Part shown: piece by piece, positions 7,175-32,252 of the stretch
How positions within the stretch are numbered: position 1 is the first letter of the stretch
Layout of the letters: each line of letters begins with the position of its first letter
Sequence record: PP496444.1
DNA: 64,000 nt
Direction: 5' to 3' (one strand)
Made by a program: the position numbers and the translations under genes
Notes under the pieces: model-generated
Databases searched by the model: none
Seen by the model: the letters and a program-made list of their open reading frames with translations, nothing else
Told to the model about the DNA's origin: nothing

Positions 7175-9379
7175 ATGACAATCAAGAGTGCTACATTCGC
7201 GGCAGCGGAATCGCAAGCTCAAGGCCTAGCCAGCTCGATGGGCTGGCCGGGAGAGGTACTGGACAACGGGGATGGCACTGTCACTCTGTCGCCACCCGAC
7301 GCATGGGACGATGAAGAGAATCCCGGCAAGGTGGCAGCGTCCAAGCTGACCGGCAACAAGGACTGTCACGTCTTCGCCAGCATGGCGGTGCCCAGTGAAG
7401 GTGAGTGGATGGCTGTCGTCATTCAAGGCACCCCGGCACTGGTACTCATCGATCAAGGATCTGGTGAAGGCTGGTTGACCCTACAGGCCCCTGCGGACTT
7501 CGATGTTCCGGAGAGCGTGCTGATTCCTTTCCAACAACGCCTGACCCAAACGGAAACTGCTTCAATGGATATCGAAAAAGATGTAGAACTGGCCGCAGGG
7601 AAGAAAGCTTCCGAGGTTGACGTATTGCTCAAGCTGCGTGCTGAGTACGACAGCATCAAGACGGCTAAGTCCCGTGTAGGTATCTTGCGGGCTAGGAACC
7701 CGACTGAGTACAAGAGGAAAGTAGCTGCTCTTACCAAACGGGAAGAAAAGCTGAAAGCTGCTATCGAGAAGATCGTTCCTTCGGGCCGTATGCCGTCACA
7801 AGAAAGTCTGGTTCGCCGGAAGGCAGCAGAATCAGGCAAGCCCGCAGCACCGGTTAAGCGGGTGAGCAAGGAGGCTAAGGACAAGGCAGCAAAGGACCGA
7901 ATCCACCAGAACATGCTTCAAGACTCCAAACGTACCAGTGATACGGTCAAGAAACATGGGGTCTCAGAGTCGGAAGCTCGTACCCTGCACCGGGGCAAGT
8001 ACCCCAAGTCTTACATGCAGGCTGAAAAGGATCTGGACGAACTTACCCACAAGCTAAAAGATCCTGATCTTACTGACGCGCAGGAAGCCAAGCTGGAAAA
8101 AGAAGTAAAGGAACGTCGTGCGCAACTGAAGGCGAAGAAAAAGAAATACGATGCCGTCCTCAAGGAATCGGAGGAAGCCTCAGTCCAGCCGGATACCCGT
8201 ACACAGGTTCTGGCTAACGTATCCAGCGACCCGGCTGCACCTGAGTATCAGGAAGCCTCGATCACGGGTGTCACGCCGGAAGGTCACATCTCAGTAGCGT
8301 TTGCTGATGGCGACATCGGGGTGTACCAAGGTAAATTCGACCCCGCGGGTCTGATGCCAATCGCGGAAGCGGCAGGCGTTGAAGTTGCCAGCTTCAAACA
8401 CCACACCATGGTTCTGGCCAACGTTGGCACTGCGGCAGCACCTGAATACGCCGAAGCCGAGGTGGTTGGTTCCACTGAGGAAGGCCATCTGGAAGTCGCG
8501 TTTGCCGATGGTGACGTGGGCATCTACCGTTCCATGTTCCACCCTACCGGTATCCTGCCGCTGGGTGTGACTGCCGAGACGGCCAGTGTGCTCATCGAGG
8601 TAGCTGCACGTACGGCAATGACCCCGGAGCAGAAGCTCAAGCGTGCACAGGACCTGCTCAAGCTGCGTACGCTGCACGACAAGTACGAGACCAATACCGA
8701 CGCCCTGAAAGGCAAGAAAGGTCCGGATAACAAAGCCAAGCGTGACAAGAACAACGCTGACAAGGCCAAACTCCGCGCCAAGCTGGACAAGATGGGTGTC
8801 ACGTCCCTGCCGAGCAAAGCTCACCTGCAGCGTACCATCAAGCAGCACAGCGATCTGCCGACCCGCATGCGTGCATCGGACAAGAAGCCAGCTGTCAAGC
8901 CTGCAACCAAGCCGGGGGCGAAACCCGCTGCCAAGAAGTCACCGCTTGAGGAACTGCAAAAGCAGATTAGATTCCTCAAGGTGAAGCTCACGTTGCCGGG
9001 CACCGCTGACTCCAAGGCCAAAGTCAAAGCTGACATCAAGAAGCTTACCGATAAGGTGAGCACGATGAAAGCTGACGCCCCGGCCAAGGATAAACCCGCT
9101 GCCAAGAAGCCTAACTCGGTGGCCGTTCTTCGAGAAGCAGCTTTGGCGTTGGAAGACTATCAAAAGTCTATCAAGGGTAAGAAGCATACCCCCGCTAACA
9201 AGTTAAAGCTGGCAGAGCTCAAAGAGGCCGTAGCGGAAGCTAGAAAGATCGCCAAGGCTGACAACGCCAGGTCGGCAGCACGGGGTAAGGCACAGCACGC
9301 GAAAGATAGTGCCAAGCATGCCAAAGGTCAAAGGGAGTTCGATAAAGACGTTAAACTCGGACTGAAGAGCGTTGACTAA
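7175..9379 (+). CDS. Putative head/core protein with Lys-rich regions and two Tudor-like repeats
   Basis: About 735 aa; repeats at 8201 and 8405 (VLANV..P.Y..A.I...T.EGH..VAFADGD.G.Y); Lys/Ala-rich histone-like segments; directly upstream of protease. Confidence 0.6.
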   Translation: MTIKSATFAAAESQAQGLASSMGWPGEVLDNGDGTVTLSPPDAWDDEENPGKVAASKLTGNKDCHVFASMAVPSEGEWMAVVIQGTPALVLIDQGSGEGWLTLQAPADFDVPESVLIPFQQRLTQTETASMDIEKDVELAAGKKASEVDVLLKLRAEYDSIKTAKSRVGILRARNPTEYKRKVAALTKREEKLKAAIEKIVPSGRMPSQESLVRRKAAESGKPAAPVKRVSKEAKDKAAKDRIHQNMLQDSKRTSDTVKKHGVSESEARTLHRGKYPKSYMQAEKDLDELTHKLKDPDLTDAQEAKLEKEVKERRAQLKAKKKKYDAVLKESEEASVQPDTRTQVLANVSSDPAAPEYQEASITGVTPEGHISVAFADGDIGVYQGKFDPAGLMPIAEAAGVEVASFKHHTMVLANVGTAAAPEYAEAEVVGSTEEGHLEVAFADGDVGIYRSMFHPTGILPLGVTAETASVLIEVAARTAMTPEQKLKRAQDLLKLRTLHDKYETNTDALKGKKGPDNKAKRDKNNADKAKLRAKLDKMGVTSLPSKAHLQRTIKQHSDLPTRMRASDKKPAVKPATKPGAKPAAKKSPLEELQKQIRFLKVKLTLPGTADSKAKVKADIKKLTDKVSTMKADAPAKDKPAAKKPNSVAVLREAALALEDYQKSIKGKKHTPANKLKLAELKEAVAEARKIAKADNARSAARGKAQHAKDSAKHAKGQREFDKDVKLGLKSVD

Positions 9380-29989: not shown

Positions 29990-30028
29990 CCCGTTTTAGG
30001 GTCTTGGAAATTATTTTATGCTGCCCAC

Positions 30029-30057
30029 TTGACACTATGAAATATACCTGACATAAT
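30029..30057 (+). promoter_or_regulatory. sigma70-type promoter TTGACA-17-CATAAT
   Basis: Perfect -35, 17-bp spacer, 5/6 -10, AT-rich upstream. Confidence 0.8.
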
Positions 30058-30147
30058 GGTGCCATGCTGGGGTTTCATGGGCCGGTAAACAATGATACCA
30101 GCCACCCCCATCATCACCACTACCGATGTCCTTTAGGAGATGCACCG

Positions 30148-32040
30148 ATGTCCAATACTTCCAAGGTTACCGCGCTGTCCACTTTCAAGATCGCCAAACT
30201 GACTCAATCGATTTTGGATATCCTGAAAAAAGACGGCTCGATGTCACTCAGCGAATACGGCGAGCTGCCGTTGCAGGTGGGTATGGCAACCGAGGTATTG
30301 CTTCACGCAGACTGTCCCGCCAACACCGTGTTCAGCATCAAGGGCCGCACCATTGGTCGCTACGTCGAACTGACCCATCTCGATGTCGCTGACAAGATCA
30401 AGCCGGACCCACTCGCCACTATCGGCGCTACCAGCGCTGCGCAGATCCCCGCCGCATTGGACGGCGAAGTCAACTTGATGTATCTCGCCATCCCTACCAC
30501 CACCGAAATGGACGAAGACGGTCTGCTCGAATACGTCGAAGAGATGATCGGCGCCATTCGTGAGTCGCTTGTGTCCGAAGGTTACTCCCCCGAGGAACGT
30601 GAGACGCTGATCGGCATTCACAAAGAGTTTGTCGAGCACACTAGCGAAGTGCATATGTTCATCGACAGCGACGTCCTCGAAGACCCGAAATACAGCGTCA
30701 CCATCGACGAGTACTTCGAGCCAGAGTCCTACGAGAAGTTCGACAGCGACGAGTACGACGAGAAGTATCGCTTGCCGGAACTGCTGCGCGGCCTGCCAGA
30801 CGACGTCATGCTGGAACTCGCTGGCAAGCTCGATATCAAGAAGGGCACGACCAAGAAGTCGAAGCTGACCACGGCGTCCATCACCGAGGCCATCCTCAAG
30901 CTCGACGCCGAAGTCGTCAAAGCGGCCATCTCCGAACTGATCGACCCCGCCGCTGCTGCTGACGCTACCCCGGAAGGCGCCGACGCCGATGTGGCCGAGA
31001 CCCTCAGCGGTTTGACGTCCAAGCAACTGCGCGAAGTGGCCGAGCACATGGAGCTGGAAATCGGCAAGAAGGACAAGTCCGAAGCCATTACCGCGCTGAT
31101 CCTCGGTGAAGATGAGGGCGACGTGATCGATGCACTGGACGCACTGGGCTTGCTGGAAGATGAAACCCCGGACGCCACCCCCGAGGAGGAATCGCTGGAA
31201 GATATCCTGAAAGGTTTGGCCGACGGCAGCGTTCGTGCCACGGCCAAAGCGCTGAAGATCACCATGCCGAAGAAGATGGCACTGGACGACGTGATCGCCA
31301 AGCTGCTGGAAGAAGATGCGAACGACGTAGCGGAAGCGCTGGTTGATCTGGGCTTCGTCGAAGCGGACGAGGAAGAAGAGCAGGAGGAAGAAGAGGAGCA
31401 ACCCGAATCCCCACCGGCTGACGACGAGGAAGAAGAGGAAGAAGAACTCGACACCGTGGAACTGGAGAACGCGCTGGCCGAGCTGGACGTTGACCAGATG
31501 ACCGTCGTGATCGAAACGCTGGAGCTGGAGCTGCCGAAGAAGTCGACGCTGGCAACCCTGACCAAGGTGATCATGTCCTCCGTGACCGACGCCGAGTCGC
31601 TGGAAGCGGCGACCGACGCCGTGGCAGCAGAAGCTGGCGAGGGTGAGGAAGGCGAGTCGCTGGAAACGTTGTACAGCGTGCTGGTCGATCTGAAAGCAAC
31701 CCGTGGCAATGCAGCAACCCGCAAGGAAGCGCTGGCCGAGATGTCGGAAACCGACTTGACCGAAGCCAAGCGCAAAGACGTGGTCGCCCTGTTCGCCATC
31801 GCTGAGATGACCGAGCTGGACGAGGACGCCGAAGAGCTGATCACCCGACTGGCCGGTCCCGACTCCGAACTGAACGAGACCGTGATGGGCTACTACACCA
31901 AGGTGTTCGACAAGCTGATCGTGGACAGCACCGAAGATGAAACCCCGGAGCCAGTCAAAGCGCCAGCGAAGGGCAAAGCCAACGCAGCCAAACCGGCGGG
32001 CAAGGGTCCAACCACCCGCAAGCCAGCCAGCAAGAAGTAA
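30148..32040 (+). CDS. Very acidic protein with four Rho_N/HeH-like helical repeats and a basic tail
   Basis: AGGAG SD then ATG 30148; repeats near 30781, 31000, 31204 and 31471; poly-E linkers; C-terminal K/P/A-rich tail. Confidence 0.75.
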   Translation: MSNTSKVTALSTFKIAKLTQSILDILKKDGSMSLSEYGELPLQVGMATEVLLHADCPANTVFSIKGRTIGRYVELTHLDVADKIKPDPLATIGATSAAQIPAALDGEVNLMYLAIPTTTEMDEDGLLEYVEEMIGAIRESLVSEGYSPEERETLIGIHKEFVEHTSEVHMFIDSDVLEDPKYSVTIDEYFEPESYEKFDSDEYDEKYRLPELLRGLPDDVMLELAGKLDIKKGTTKKSKLTTASITEAILKLDAEVVKAAISELIDPAAAADATPEGADADVAETLSGLTSKQLREVAEHMELEIGKKDKSEAITALILGEDEGDVIDALDALGLLEDETPDATPEEESLEDILKGLADGSVRATAKALKITMPKKMALDDVIAKLLEEDANDVAEALVDLGFVEADEEEEQEEEEEQPESPPADDEEEEEEELDTVELENALAELDVDQMTVVIETLELELPKKSTLATLTKVIMSSVTDAESLEAATDAVAAEAGEGEEGESLETLYSVLVDLKATRGNAATRKEALAEMSETDLTEAKRKDVVALFAIAEMTELDEDAEELITRLAGPDSELNETVMGYYTKVFDKLIVDSTEDETPEPVKAPAKGKANAAKPAGKGPTTRKPASKK

Positions 32041-32066
32041 CTGACTGACCAGTACCACCCGCCAAG

Positions 32067-32182
32067 GTGGTACTGTAGGAAAGCCGAAGAAGGTGGTTCA
32101 ACTCCATCAACTCGGAAGGCCCGCCTCCCAACAGGGCTGTTAGCTTACGCTGGTTAAAGCGTCGGCTTTCCTACAGTGCCAC
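32067..32182 (+). ncRNA. Circularly permuted tRNA-like RNA (YrlA / bacterial Y-RNA-like)
   Basis: 21-bp terminal helix (32067-87 with 32162-82) enclosing a T-arm GGTGG-TTCAACT-CCATC, a closed acceptor-like region, TA, and a D-arm GCTT-ACGCTGGTTA-AAGC. Confidence 0.75.
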
Positions 32183-32192
32183 TTTGGCAACG

Positions 32193-32219
32193 TGCCCCGG
32201 TTCCGACTGGGGCATTTTT
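32193..32219 (+). terminator. Rho-independent terminator
   Basis: tgccccgg-ttccga-ctggggca followed by TTTTT. Confidence 0.8.
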
Positions 32220-32252
32220 CTCTCAAGCCCAACTGTCCCATTGAGGTGATCC

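What the first reader, a model, noticed from the sequence alone, without database searches (positions are those of the whole stretch)
30029..32219. Self-contained unit: strong promoter, acidic HeH-repeat protein, tRNA-like RNA, terminator
Seen in sequence: a near-consensus sigma70 promoter (30029-57), one 630-aa gene, the permuted tRNA-like element 27 nt after its stop, then a terminator (32193-219). The protein has four repeats of the form L..L....L...A..L.I...KK.....I..I followed by a D.V..AL..LG helix, embedded in poly-Glu linkers. Established knowledge: this spacing resembles Rho_N/HeH (SAP/LEM-like) nucleic-acid-binding bihelical motifs. Inference: protein and RNA may form a two-component RNP. 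Alternatively the acidic scaffold is a nucleic-acid mimic that titrates host RNA/DNA-binding proteins. A hairpin at 32051-74 competes with the RNA's 5' strand and could act as a processing or folding switch.
Basis: partly seen in the sequence, partly recalled or inferred. Interest (0 to 1): 0.65.

Follow-up and report, generated by a model that had tools for sequence, protein, structure and literature searches.

The report
Early phage gene with inserted tRNA-mimic RNA
The flagged stretch is a conserved, strongly promoted early gene of a Pseudomonas putida phage, and this one phage alone has picked up a 136-base cassette behind it that encodes a mobile, anticodon-less tRNA look-alike also found in the tRNA clusters of unrelated phages, so the protein and the RNA are neighbours by accident and not a co-evolved pair.

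Summary
The window is Pseudomonas phage vB_PpuM-Peetri (PP496444.1).

- **Features:** a sigma-70 promoter matching 11 of 12 positions (30029-30057), the 630-aa gene Peetri_00032 (30148-32040), a permuted tRNA-like RNA, a competing hairpin and an intrinsic terminator (32192-32220).
- **Unit without the RNA:** promoter, gene and terminator are conserved without the RNA in all 8 sister phages and in a 44%-identical metagenomic homologue. Peetri carries a 136-nt insertion (32051-32186) between stop codon and terminator.
- **RNA family:** the insert belongs to a rare, horizontally spread phage RNA family, with 18 distinct sequences found. The order is closing stem, T-like hairpin, 7-bp acceptor-like stem with a conserved 6-nt bulge closed by a GCC...AACA loop, D arm. 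Covariation is strong. In the other named phages and viral contigs examined it sits on the tRNA strand of tRNA clusters.
- **Known RNA families:** it matches no Rfam family at gathering score and fails the YrlA model. No carrier genome tested encodes Ro60/TROVE or DUF2828.
- **Protein and RNA:** the protein occurs in only 9 phages plus one contig, and the two distributions overlap only in Peetri. The RNP reading is therefore not supported.
- **Protein repeats:** they model as SAP/HeH-like four-helix modules (Z 5.4-7.8), which supports that part of the reading moderately.

This scan has noted similar permuted tRNA mimics before on other phage DNA.

The parts
30029..30057 (+). sigma-70-type promoter, TTGACA-17-CATAAT with TG extension and an A/T-rich stretch upstream
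   Evidence: 11 of 12 positions. Conserved in four aligned sisters and in the distant homologue L038. Only site of this quality in the window.
30058..30147 (+). about 90-nt leader with conserved blocks and an AGGAG ribosome-binding site at 30135-30139
   Evidence: Alignment A6: blocks are conserved even in the homologue with 44% protein identity.
30148..32040 (+). Peetri_00032: 630-aa acidic protein with an N-terminal region, a ferredoxin-like domain (about aa 98-206), 4-5 SAP/HeH-like repeats in poly-Glu/Asp linkers, a helical C-terminal domain and a basic Lys/Pro/Ala tail (aa 601-630)
   Evidence: dN/dS is about 0.20 against the sisters.
32051..32186 (+). 136-nt insertion present only in Peetri, replacing the 4 nt CGCW of the sister phages
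   Evidence: Alignment A1. All 8 sisters match only 32187-32225. The covariance model finds no copy in 4 sister genomes.
32050..32077 (+). 10-bp hairpin that shares bases with the outer half of the closing stem
   Evidence: -17.4 kcal/mol, z -5.0.
32061..32087 (+). 5' strand of the 27-bp closing stem, which stands where a tRNA has its anticodon stem; contains GCCGAAG at 32083-32089
32092..32108 (+). T-arm-like hairpin: GGTGG, loop TTCAACT, CCATC
   Evidence: All six pairs of this helix covary in the family.
32110..32140 (+). acceptor-like 7-bp stem (32110-11 and 32118-22 paired with 32134-40), with a 6-nt bulge TCGGAA (32112-17), closed by the loop GCC...AACA (32123-33)
   Evidence: five pairs never change; pair 37/68 switches U-A to A-U (13 to 5). 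GCC and AACA are invariant in 18 sequences.
32143..32160 (+). D-arm: GCTT, a 10-nt loop with GG, AAGC; preceded by TA (the U8 A9 positions) and followed by G (the G26 position)
32162..32188 (+). 3' strand of the 27-bp closing stem
32192..32220 (+). intrinsic terminator: 10-bp stem, 4-nt loop, T run
   Evidence: Conserved in the sisters. The L038 homologue has its own terminator directly after the stop.

Best explanation
Two unrelated things lie in one transcript.

(1) A lineage-specific, single-gene early unit. It has a host-type promoter, a conserved leader, the gene for an acidic protein built of SAP/HeH-like modules, and a terminator. It is conserved in the Peetri group of P. putida phages.

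(2) A 136-nt cassette inserted into its 3' untranslated region in Peetri alone. The cassette encodes a member of a rare, horizontally spread family of phage RNAs of about 95 nt. These are tRNA bodies in permuted order: T arm, loop-closed acceptor stem, D arm. They have no anticodon loop, and the two RNA ends meet in a helix where the anticodon stem would be.

Shown: the insertion, the family, its structure, its separation from the protein, and the absence of a phage Ro60.

Inferred: in Peetri the RNA is made as the tail of the gene-32 mRNA and is cut out through its unusually long, fully paired 27-bp stem (two G-U pairs), a plausible RNase III substrate. In the tRNA-cluster copies the neighbouring tRNA processing sites would free it.

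Inferred, about one chance in three: the free RNA works alone on a host factor that recognises the tRNA body. It would act as an uncleavable decoy for a tRNA-directed nuclease or defence sensor, or as a competitor for a tRNA-processing enzyme. The invariant acceptor stem, its bulge and the GCC after it would be the recognised surface.

The protein most likely binds nucleic acid, or docks partners of DNA metabolism, through its repeats and basic tail. Its actual role is open.
For: Insertion: sisters read stop, about 15 nt, terminator, while Peetri has 136 extra nt. The outgroup homologue L038 also lacks it, so it is a gain in Peetri.

Family: the core is 56-80% identical (BLAST segments 81-92%) in GAP31, EC152, FENT2, NINP13076, KE22/23, GSW6, pf16, Psa21, RVTF4, Astolliot, Milchi and in metagenomic contigs. 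There is one strong copy per genome at 85-102 bits.

Structure: all 10 closing-stem pairs show compensatory changes. 91.7% of cells are paired against 73% in shuffles, and slid controls collapse.

Context: in the named phages and viral contigs examined the RNA sits on the tRNA strand inside tRNA arrays, often 1-5 nt after an upstream CCA.

Independence: only 136 nt moved, with no protein gene alongside. The protein is in only 9 of 50,697 phage records and gave 8 hits among 1.84 billion representatives. Five RNA carriers lack it. No TROVE or DUF2828 was found in Peetri or 5 carriers.

Protein: dN/dS 0.20; SAP-like fold matches.
Against: No expression data: no sequencing run was listed, so co-transcription, RNase III release and RNA stability are inferred. 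The decoy function has no direct evidence. The SAP/HeH-like repeats are nucleic-acid-binding folds, so a secondary, Peetri-specific contact between protein and RNA cannot be excluded. The DUF2828 searches had no positive control. The host genome could not be searched for Ro60. BLAST and exact-pattern scans may under-count divergent family members.
Confidence: 0.8

Rival explanations
1. One reading: protein and RNA are a dedicated two-component RNP encoded as one unit.
For: They share one promoter and one terminator in Peetri. The repeats have a SAP/HeH/Rho_N-like fold known to bind nucleic acids.
Against: Nine other loci with the gene lack the RNA. Five RNA-carrying genomes lack the protein, and across the phage collection the protein was found only in the nine P. 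putida phages. The insertion is 136 nt of RNA gene only.
Confidence: 0.06
2. The RNA is a Y RNA of the YrlA type that recruits the host's Ro60 (Rsr), so the phage borrows host RNA quality control or repair.
For: It has the same permuted order as YrlA: stem, T arm, loop-closed acceptor-like stem, D arm, stem (PMC4201824). Peetri's copy has GCCGAAG at 32083-32089, which fits the YrlA motif GNCGAAN0-1G. A Pseudomonas YrlA is reported in that paper.
Against: Rfam YrlA (RF02553) gives no hit in Peetri, and only 20.5 bits against a gathering score of 69 for the Psa21 copy. No TROVE in 6 carrier phages. The motif is absent from the other 17 members, whose closing stems share no sequence. Host Rsr could not be checked.
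Confidence: 0.12
3. The RNA is opened at the acceptor loop by RNase P, trimmed and given CCA, making a two-piece, possibly aminoacylated mini-tRNA, like M. smegmatis YrlA or two-piece tmRNA.
For: It has a 7-bp acceptor stem followed by an invariant GCC, which fits a discriminator G plus CC, and three members encode GCCA. M. smegmatis YrlA, with a 7-bp stem, is cut by RNase P and receives CCA (PMC4201824).
Against: The 6-nt bulge in the acceptor stem and the invariant AACA before G1 are not tRNA features. No identity element could be assigned. ARAGORN finds no permuted tmRNA. The third pair is G-C, not the G-U of alanine acceptors.
Confidence: 0.15
4. The element is a functionless scar: a junction of two decayed tRNA genes copied by illegitimate recombination.
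For: It lies in tRNA clusters. Its distribution is sporadic. An HNH endonuclease gene lies 37 nt upstream in Astolliot, so it could hitch-hike with homing.
Against: 29 core columns, most of them in the acceptor stem, loop and D stem, are invariant across phages with very different base composition, while the stems keep pairing through compensatory changes. The length and the bulge are conserved in all 18 sequences.
Confidence: 0.08
5. For the protein alone: the acidic scaffold is a nucleic-acid mimic that soaks up host DNA- or RNA-binding proteins early in infection.
For: pI 4.2, with runs of up to about 27 acidic residues per 50. It has the only near-consensus host promoter in the window. The family is very narrow, as is common for host-takeover proteins.
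Against: The folded modules are SAP/HeH-like, and the tail is basic. The same module follows SSB-like DUF669 domains in other phage proteins. That fits a docking or DNA-binding role in DNA metabolism as well as mimicry does.
Confidence: 0.2

Closest known systems
YrlA, the tRNA-like bacterial Y RNA (Rfam RF02553; Chen et al. 2014, PMC4201824)
   Same: Same circular permutation of a tRNA body: the ends pair in a stem, followed by T arm, loop-closed acceptor-like stem and D arm. The conserved U8, A14, G18 G19 and T-loop-type nucleotides are present. A 7-bp acceptor stem is also seen in M. smegmatis YrlA, which RNase P cuts.
   Different: It fails the Rfam model. There is no Ro60 gene nearby or anywhere in six carrier phages. 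The family has no conserved Ro-binding motif. It has its own conserved bulge (NNGGAM) and GCC...AACA loop. It lives in tRNA arrays or, in Peetri, in an mRNA tail.
Two-piece (permuted) tmRNA of alpha-proteobacteria and others (own knowledge; tmRNA review PMC11915505 not read in detail)
   Same: In the gene the 3' acceptor half comes before the 5' half, joined by a loop that is removed in tmRNA. The T loop TTCAACT resembles that of tmRNA.
   Different: There is no mRNA-like domain or tag, no G3-U70, and a true D stem is present. ARAGORN does not call it.
Other permuted tRNA mimics noted by this scan in phages, beside DUF2828 (Ro60-like) or DUF7873 genes
   Same: Same general design and the same habitat: phage tRNA clusters and jumbo phages.
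   Different: Those notes describe a stem-plus-CAGCAA handle and a protein partner. Neither is present in this family. DUF2828 was not found (no positive control). DUF7873 was not tested.
SAP / HeH / Rho N-terminal bihelical domains (PIAS1 1v66, FAN1, SIZ1, Rho 1a62) and the C-terminal domain of T4 endonuclease VII (1e7d)
   Same: Each repeat is predicted as a small helical module with the helix-extended loop-helix core. These entries are the top structural matches for three different repeats. There is a PHROG 3281 match.
   Different: No Pfam SAP, Rho_N, HeH or LEM match. Z stays under 8. The modules are net acidic apart from a conserved KK in the loop, and each carries an extra D.V..AL..LG helix.

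Membership tests
YrlA / bacterial Y RNA (RF02553) | Permuted tRNA-like order: terminal stem, T arm, loop-closed acceptor-like stem, D arm | tested here: met
YrlA / bacterial Y RNA (RF02553) | Score at or above the Rfam gathering score (69 bits) | tested here: not met
   no hit in Peetri at E<=1; Psa21 copy 20.5 bits; nothing at this site.
YrlA / bacterial Y RNA (RF02553) | Encoded within about 4 kb of a Ro60/TROVE gene on the same strand (PMC4201824) | tested here: not met
   no TROVE in Peetri, GAP31, Psa21, pf16, RVTF4 or GSW6; the controls responded.
YrlA / bacterial Y RNA (RF02553) | GNCGAAN0-1G motif near the 5' end (proposed Ro contact) | tested here: inconclusive
   Peetri has GCCGAAG at 32083-32089. 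The other 17 members have no such motif.
Canonical tRNA (RF00005) | Anticodon arm and a cloverleaf in the normal order, scoring at least 29 bits | tested here: not met
   neither ARAGORN nor Rfam calls it. The anticodon loop is replaced by the RNA's two ends.
Canonical tRNA (RF00005) | Conserved elbow nucleotides (U8, A14, G18 G19, A21, T54 T55 C56, A58, G53-C61), 7-bp acceptor stem, 4-bp D stem | tested here: met
   Read from the sequence and alignment A3. Exception: four metagenomic members replace the T loop and the GG of the D loop.
Permuted two-piece tmRNA | Tag reading frame, pseudoknots and G3-U70 | tested here: not met
   (no tmRNA called). The third acceptor pair is G-C in all 18 sequences.
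SAP / HeH / Rho_N domain (protein repeats) | Match to the Pfam family models | tested here: not met
   no SAP, Rho_N, HeH or LEM hit up to E 10. A weak relative, P0008, has Rho_N at 22.5 bits against a cut-off of 24.9.
SAP / HeH / Rho_N domain (protein repeats) | Helix-extended loop-helix fold | tested here: met
   AF2 pLDDT 75-89 in the repeats. PIAS1 SAP Z 6.8-7.8 (60-63 of 65 residues), FAN1 SAP Z 6.7-7.3, SIZ1 SAP Z 5.5-6.5, Rho N-terminal Z 5.4. Z is under 8, so support is moderate.
SAP / HeH / Rho_N domain (protein repeats) | Binds DNA or RNA | not testable with these tools
   Needs EMSA.
Sigma-70 promoter and intrinsic terminator | Consensus hexamers with 17-nt spacing; GC stem followed by a T run | tested here: met

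The most novel reading that the evidence does not exclude
A stand-alone, horizontally mobile, anticodon-less tRNA body that needs no Ro60 and no phage protein partner. It would work as a decoy for host tRNA-directed nucleases or defence sensors, or, after RNase P and CCA addition, as a two-piece charged mini-tRNA. Peetri would then show that a cassette of only 136 nt, with its own long processing stem, is enough to transplant this function into the tail of an mRNA in a phage that has no tRNA genes.
Probability: 0.25. Interest if true: 0.75.

Novelty: new variant of a known kind. Interest (0 to 1): 0.5.

Why it matters
Phage tRNA clusters are increasingly seen as answers to bacterial defences that cut tRNAs. 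A conserved tRNA body without an anticodon cannot decode anything, yet it keeps moving between unrelated phages of Pseudomonas and enterobacteria. It would then be an RNA-only player in that conflict, or in tRNA processing.

Peetri is a useful natural experiment for three reasons:
- eight near-identical sister phages lack the element;
- the insert is tiny and precisely bounded;
- no tRNA gene was found in the phage (Rfam tRNA model).

A clean deletion or transplant therefore tests the RNA's function directly. The analysis also corrects the tempting reading that neighbouring protein and RNA genes form an RNP. Finally, it identifies a recurrent acidic SAP/HeH module in phage DNA-metabolism proteins.

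Tried and rejected
- **Bacterial hits:** the 7 genome-contig hits to the acceptor-loop pattern are chance matches. The two I read lie in a coding region and a terminator and have no T or D arm, and ARAGORN finds no tRNA gene in any of the 7 loci. The family therefore looks phage-only at this search depth.
- **Permuted tmRNA:** rejected. There is no tag, no G-U third pair, and no ARAGORN call.
- **Two adjacent tRNA halves:** rejected. The flanks pair with each other and covary, and neither half continues into a tRNA.
- **Target-site duplication:** the ends of the insert carry an imperfect 9-nt direct repeat (CAGTACCAC / CAGTGCCAC). It is absent from the empty site of the sisters, so it is not a duplication of this target.
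- **Stem-plus-CAGCAA handle from earlier scan notes:** it is not part of this family. CAGCAA at the sisters' empty site is a 6-mer expected about 30 times in the window by chance.
- **Foldseek on the full-length model:** uninformative in both the pdb and viral libraries. The two-repeat model gave only weak FAN1 rows.
- **Other protein searches:** the ESM Atlas gave no usable hit. Pfam gave nothing for any segment.
- **Neighbouring proteins of the RNA in other phages:** no shared Pfam family.
Full report
**Identity and observation.** The window is identical to Pseudomonas phage vB_PpuM-Peetri (PP496444.1, 200,264 bp, host P. putida KT2440/Paw85), and window coordinates equal record coordinates.
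- Promoter: TTGACA-17-CATAAT with TG at 30029-30057, 11 of 12 positions. It is the only site of that quality in 64 kb.
- Gene: a 630-aa ORF at 30148-32040 with AGGAG 8 nt upstream, annotated Peetri_00032, hypothetical protein.
- RNA: a strongly folding stretch after the stop (z -7.4).
- Hairpin: 10 bp at 32050-32077, -17.4 kcal/mol.
- Terminator: 32192-32220.

**The gene unit is conserved without the RNA.** Eight sister phages from Estonian waters (Lauda, Aura, Pori-4, SKa-4, KoPa-5, Voja-6, Amme-1, Illi-2) align at 86-89% over the region. With the 185 nt behind the stop codon as query, they match only 32187-32225, the terminator.

The alignment of four of them shows stop codon, CTGACTGACC, four bases CGCW, then the terminator. 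Peetri has 136 extra bases at 32051-32186 in place of CGCW. A covariance model of the RNA finds one copy in Peetri and none in four complete sister genomes.

The only more distant homologue, P0006, is 44% identical and comes from a 4.6-kb assembly contig. It keeps a TTGACA-17-TTTAAT promoter, conserved leader blocks and a terminator directly after the stop, again without the RNA. With this outgroup, the simplest history is a gain in the Peetri lineage.

**What the insert encodes.** The core at 32095-32161 matches unannotated DNA in unrelated phages at 81-89%:
- Cronobacter GAP31, Enterobacter EC152 and FENT2, Salmonella NINP13076 and KE22/23 (Seunavirus);
- Salmonella GSW6, a T5-like Epseptimavirus and the only Demerecviridae record among the hits;
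- Pseudomonas pf16, Psa21, RVTF4, Astolliot and Milchi.

Pattern scans of viral and metagenomic contigs raised the set to 18 distinct sequences. Seven bacterial hits are chance matches: the two I read lie in a coding region and a terminator and have no T or D arm, and ARAGORN finds no tRNA gene in any of the 7 loci.

In the named phages and viral contigs examined, the element lies inside a tRNA array on the tRNA strand, often 1-5 nt after an upstream CCA. Each carrier genome tested has one strong copy at 94-102 bits. No tRNA gene was found in Peetri by the Rfam model.

**Structure of the RNA.** The consensus runs as follows:
- a closing stem of 6-14 bp (27 bp in Peetri);
- about five bases, AGAAC in most members;
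- a T-like hairpin;
- a 7-bp acceptor-like stem whose 3'-type strand carries a 6-nt bulge NNGGAM, closed by a loop that begins with an invariant GCC and ends with an invariant AACA;
- UA;
- a D arm GCUU...AAGC;
- G, then the closing stem again.

On 18 sequences, 91.7% of cells are paired against 73.0% in shuffles. There are 88 compensatory cells against 30. All 10 closing-stem pairs and all 6 T-stem pairs show changes on both sides. The acceptor pair next to the T stem switches U-A to A-U (13 to 5). Sliding the partners by one to three columns drops pairing to 24-50%.

The order is that of a tRNA opened at the anticodon loop and closed at the acceptor end. U8, A14, G18 G19, A21, G26, G53-C61 and the T loop TTCRANY are in place.

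Four metagenomic members replace the T loop with other loops and lose the GG of the D loop. In one (L029) the two loops are Watson-Crick complementary (CGTTA and TAACG), which suggests that the elbow contact is kept by other means (seen in sequence).

By contrast, 29 core columns, most of them in the acceptor stem, its loop and the D stem, are invariant across phages with very different base composition.

**Known families.** No Rfam family reaches its gathering score at this site in Peetri or six carriers. The closest known design is YrlA, the tRNA-like Y RNA that partners bacterial and phage Ro60. It has the same permuted order, and in M. smegmatis it is cut by RNase P and receives CCA (PMC4201824). 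Membership fails on three counts:
- RF02553 gives no hit in Peetri, and 20.5 bits against a gathering score of 69 for Psa21.
- No TROVE gene exists in Peetri or five other carriers, and the search rang in two of the 14 control genomes (Deinococcus, Bacteroides). DUF2828 was also not found, but that search had no positive control.
- The closing stems share no sequence.

Peetri alone has GCCGAAG at 32083-32089, which fits the YrlA motif GNCGAAN0-1G. I cannot tell whether this is chance. Earlier notes of this scan describe other permuted tRNA mimics in phages next to DUF2828 or DUF7873 genes. This family lacks their handle motif and, as far as tested, their protein partner.

**The protein.** Peetri_00032 is under purifying selection, with dN/dS about 0.20 against four sisters, and the family is very narrow. 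It occurs in 9 of 50,697 phage records by tblastn. The word search found six clusters. A profile search of 1.84 billion representatives gave 8 hits, only 2 of them strong. Five RNA-carrying phages lack it.

Pfam finds nothing. PHROGs gives a weak match to the family annotated endonuclease VII, over aa 253-318.

AlphaFold models the repeats with pLDDT 75-89, each as four short helices with an extended KK loop. An exhaustive structural comparison puts these at the top for three different repeats:
- PIAS1 SAP domain: Z 6.8-7.8, 60-63 of 65 residues aligned.
- FAN1 SAP domain: Z 6.7-7.3.
- SIZ1 SAP domains: Z 5.5-6.5.
- C-terminal domain of T4 endonuclease VII: Z 5.9-6.0.
- Rho N-terminal domain: Z 5.4, 21% identity.

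Z stays under 8 and death-fold helical bundles are interleaved, so the support is moderate. Residues 98-206 look ferredoxin-like, which is a generic fold (Z up to 6.4).

The weak sequence relatives P0008, P0010 and P0012 carry the same module in acidic linkers. In P0008 and P0012 the modules follow a DUF669 domain, which matches a PHROG annotated single-strand DNA-binding protein. One P0008 module reaches Pfam Rho_N at 22.5 bits against a cut-off of 24.9. The C-terminal 30 residues are a Lys/Pro/Ala-rich basic tail.

**Interpretation.** The protein and the RNA have disjoint distributions that meet only in Peetri, and nothing but the RNA gene was inserted. They are therefore not a co-evolved pair. 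The transcription unit is an early gene read from a host-type promoter that is conserved even in the 44% homologue.

In Peetri the RNA is most likely made as the tail of this mRNA, because no terminator-like site on the + strand separates them. Its 27-bp helix, fully paired with two G-U pairs, is two to four times longer than in any other member. I infer that it substitutes for the flanking tRNA processing sites by offering an RNase III site. The upstream hairpin competes for the outer 14 bp and could delay or modulate that helix. None of this has been tested.

For function, I favour an RNA that acts alone on a host factor that reads the tRNA body. Three observations point that way:
- it travels as a bare cassette;
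- it is sporadic and nearly identical across unrelated phages, as is typical of accessory counter-defence genes (own knowledge);
- it keeps an invariant acceptor stem, bulge and GCC, while everything else is conserved only in shape.

A tRNA body without an anticodon loop could bind, but not be cut by, anticodon nucleases or sensors. This is inference, at about one chance in three. The alternatives are listed with their tests: a Y RNA for host Ro60, RNase P/CCA maturation to a two-piece acceptor, or a selfish scar.

**Limits.**
- No RNA-seq or other run was listed for this phage.
- No host genome could be searched.
- The family census rests on BLAST and exact patterns, not on a full covariance-model scan.
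- The protein models rest on a shallow alignment of six sequences.

Noticed in passing
window 8353-8433 (+): ARAGORN calls an 81-nt tRNA-Gly(GCC) here. The Rfam tRNA model finds nothing in the window or in the whole Peetri genome, so it is probably a false call.
   Followed up: partly
L025:1028-1432 (Pseudomonas phage Astolliot): A free-standing HNH endonuclease gene ends 37 nt upstream of the tRNA-mimic RNA. Psa21 also has an HNH gene in the same tRNA cluster. Homing endonucleases could help spread the element.
   Followed up: no
L029:3569-3664, L033:4604-4697(-), L034:1723-1822(-), L037:4758-4847: Four metagenomic family members replace the T loop by other 5-7-nt loops and lose the GG of the D loop. 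In L029 the two loops are complementary (CGTTA / TAACG), as if a kissing contact replaced the tRNA elbow.
   Followed up: partly
L002:2404-2478 (GAP31) and L010:5590-5672: Directly upstream of the element lie unannotated tRNA-like stretches, each with a T arm and a terminal CCA. ARAGORN (L010) and the Rfam tRNA model (L002) do not call them. They may be unusual tRNAs.
   Followed up: no
window 29995-30147: The promoter, an A/T-rich upstream stretch and two leader blocks (GGTGCCATG.TGGG and CCATGTCC..TAGGAGA) are conserved even in the homologue with 44% protein identity, which hints at a regulated leader.
   Followed up: partly
proteins P0008, P0010, P0012 (metagenomic): The same acidic module with a KK loop and a D.V..AL..LG helix recurs in other phage proteins. 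In P0008 and P0012 it follows an N-terminal DUF669 domain matching a PHROG annotated single-strand DNA-binding protein. This is an undescribed shuffled module.
   Followed up: partly
window 32050-32058 and 32175-32183: An imperfect 9-nt direct repeat (CAGTACCAC / CAGTGCCAC) sits at the two ends of the insert. Both copies are complementary to 32066-32075. It is not present at the sisters' empty site, and its origin is unexplained.
   Followed up: partly
L009 (Illi-2) 2586-2668: Illi-2 lacks the homologue of the next gene, Peetri_00033, so the region just downstream of the terminator is also variable among the sister phages.
   Followed up: no
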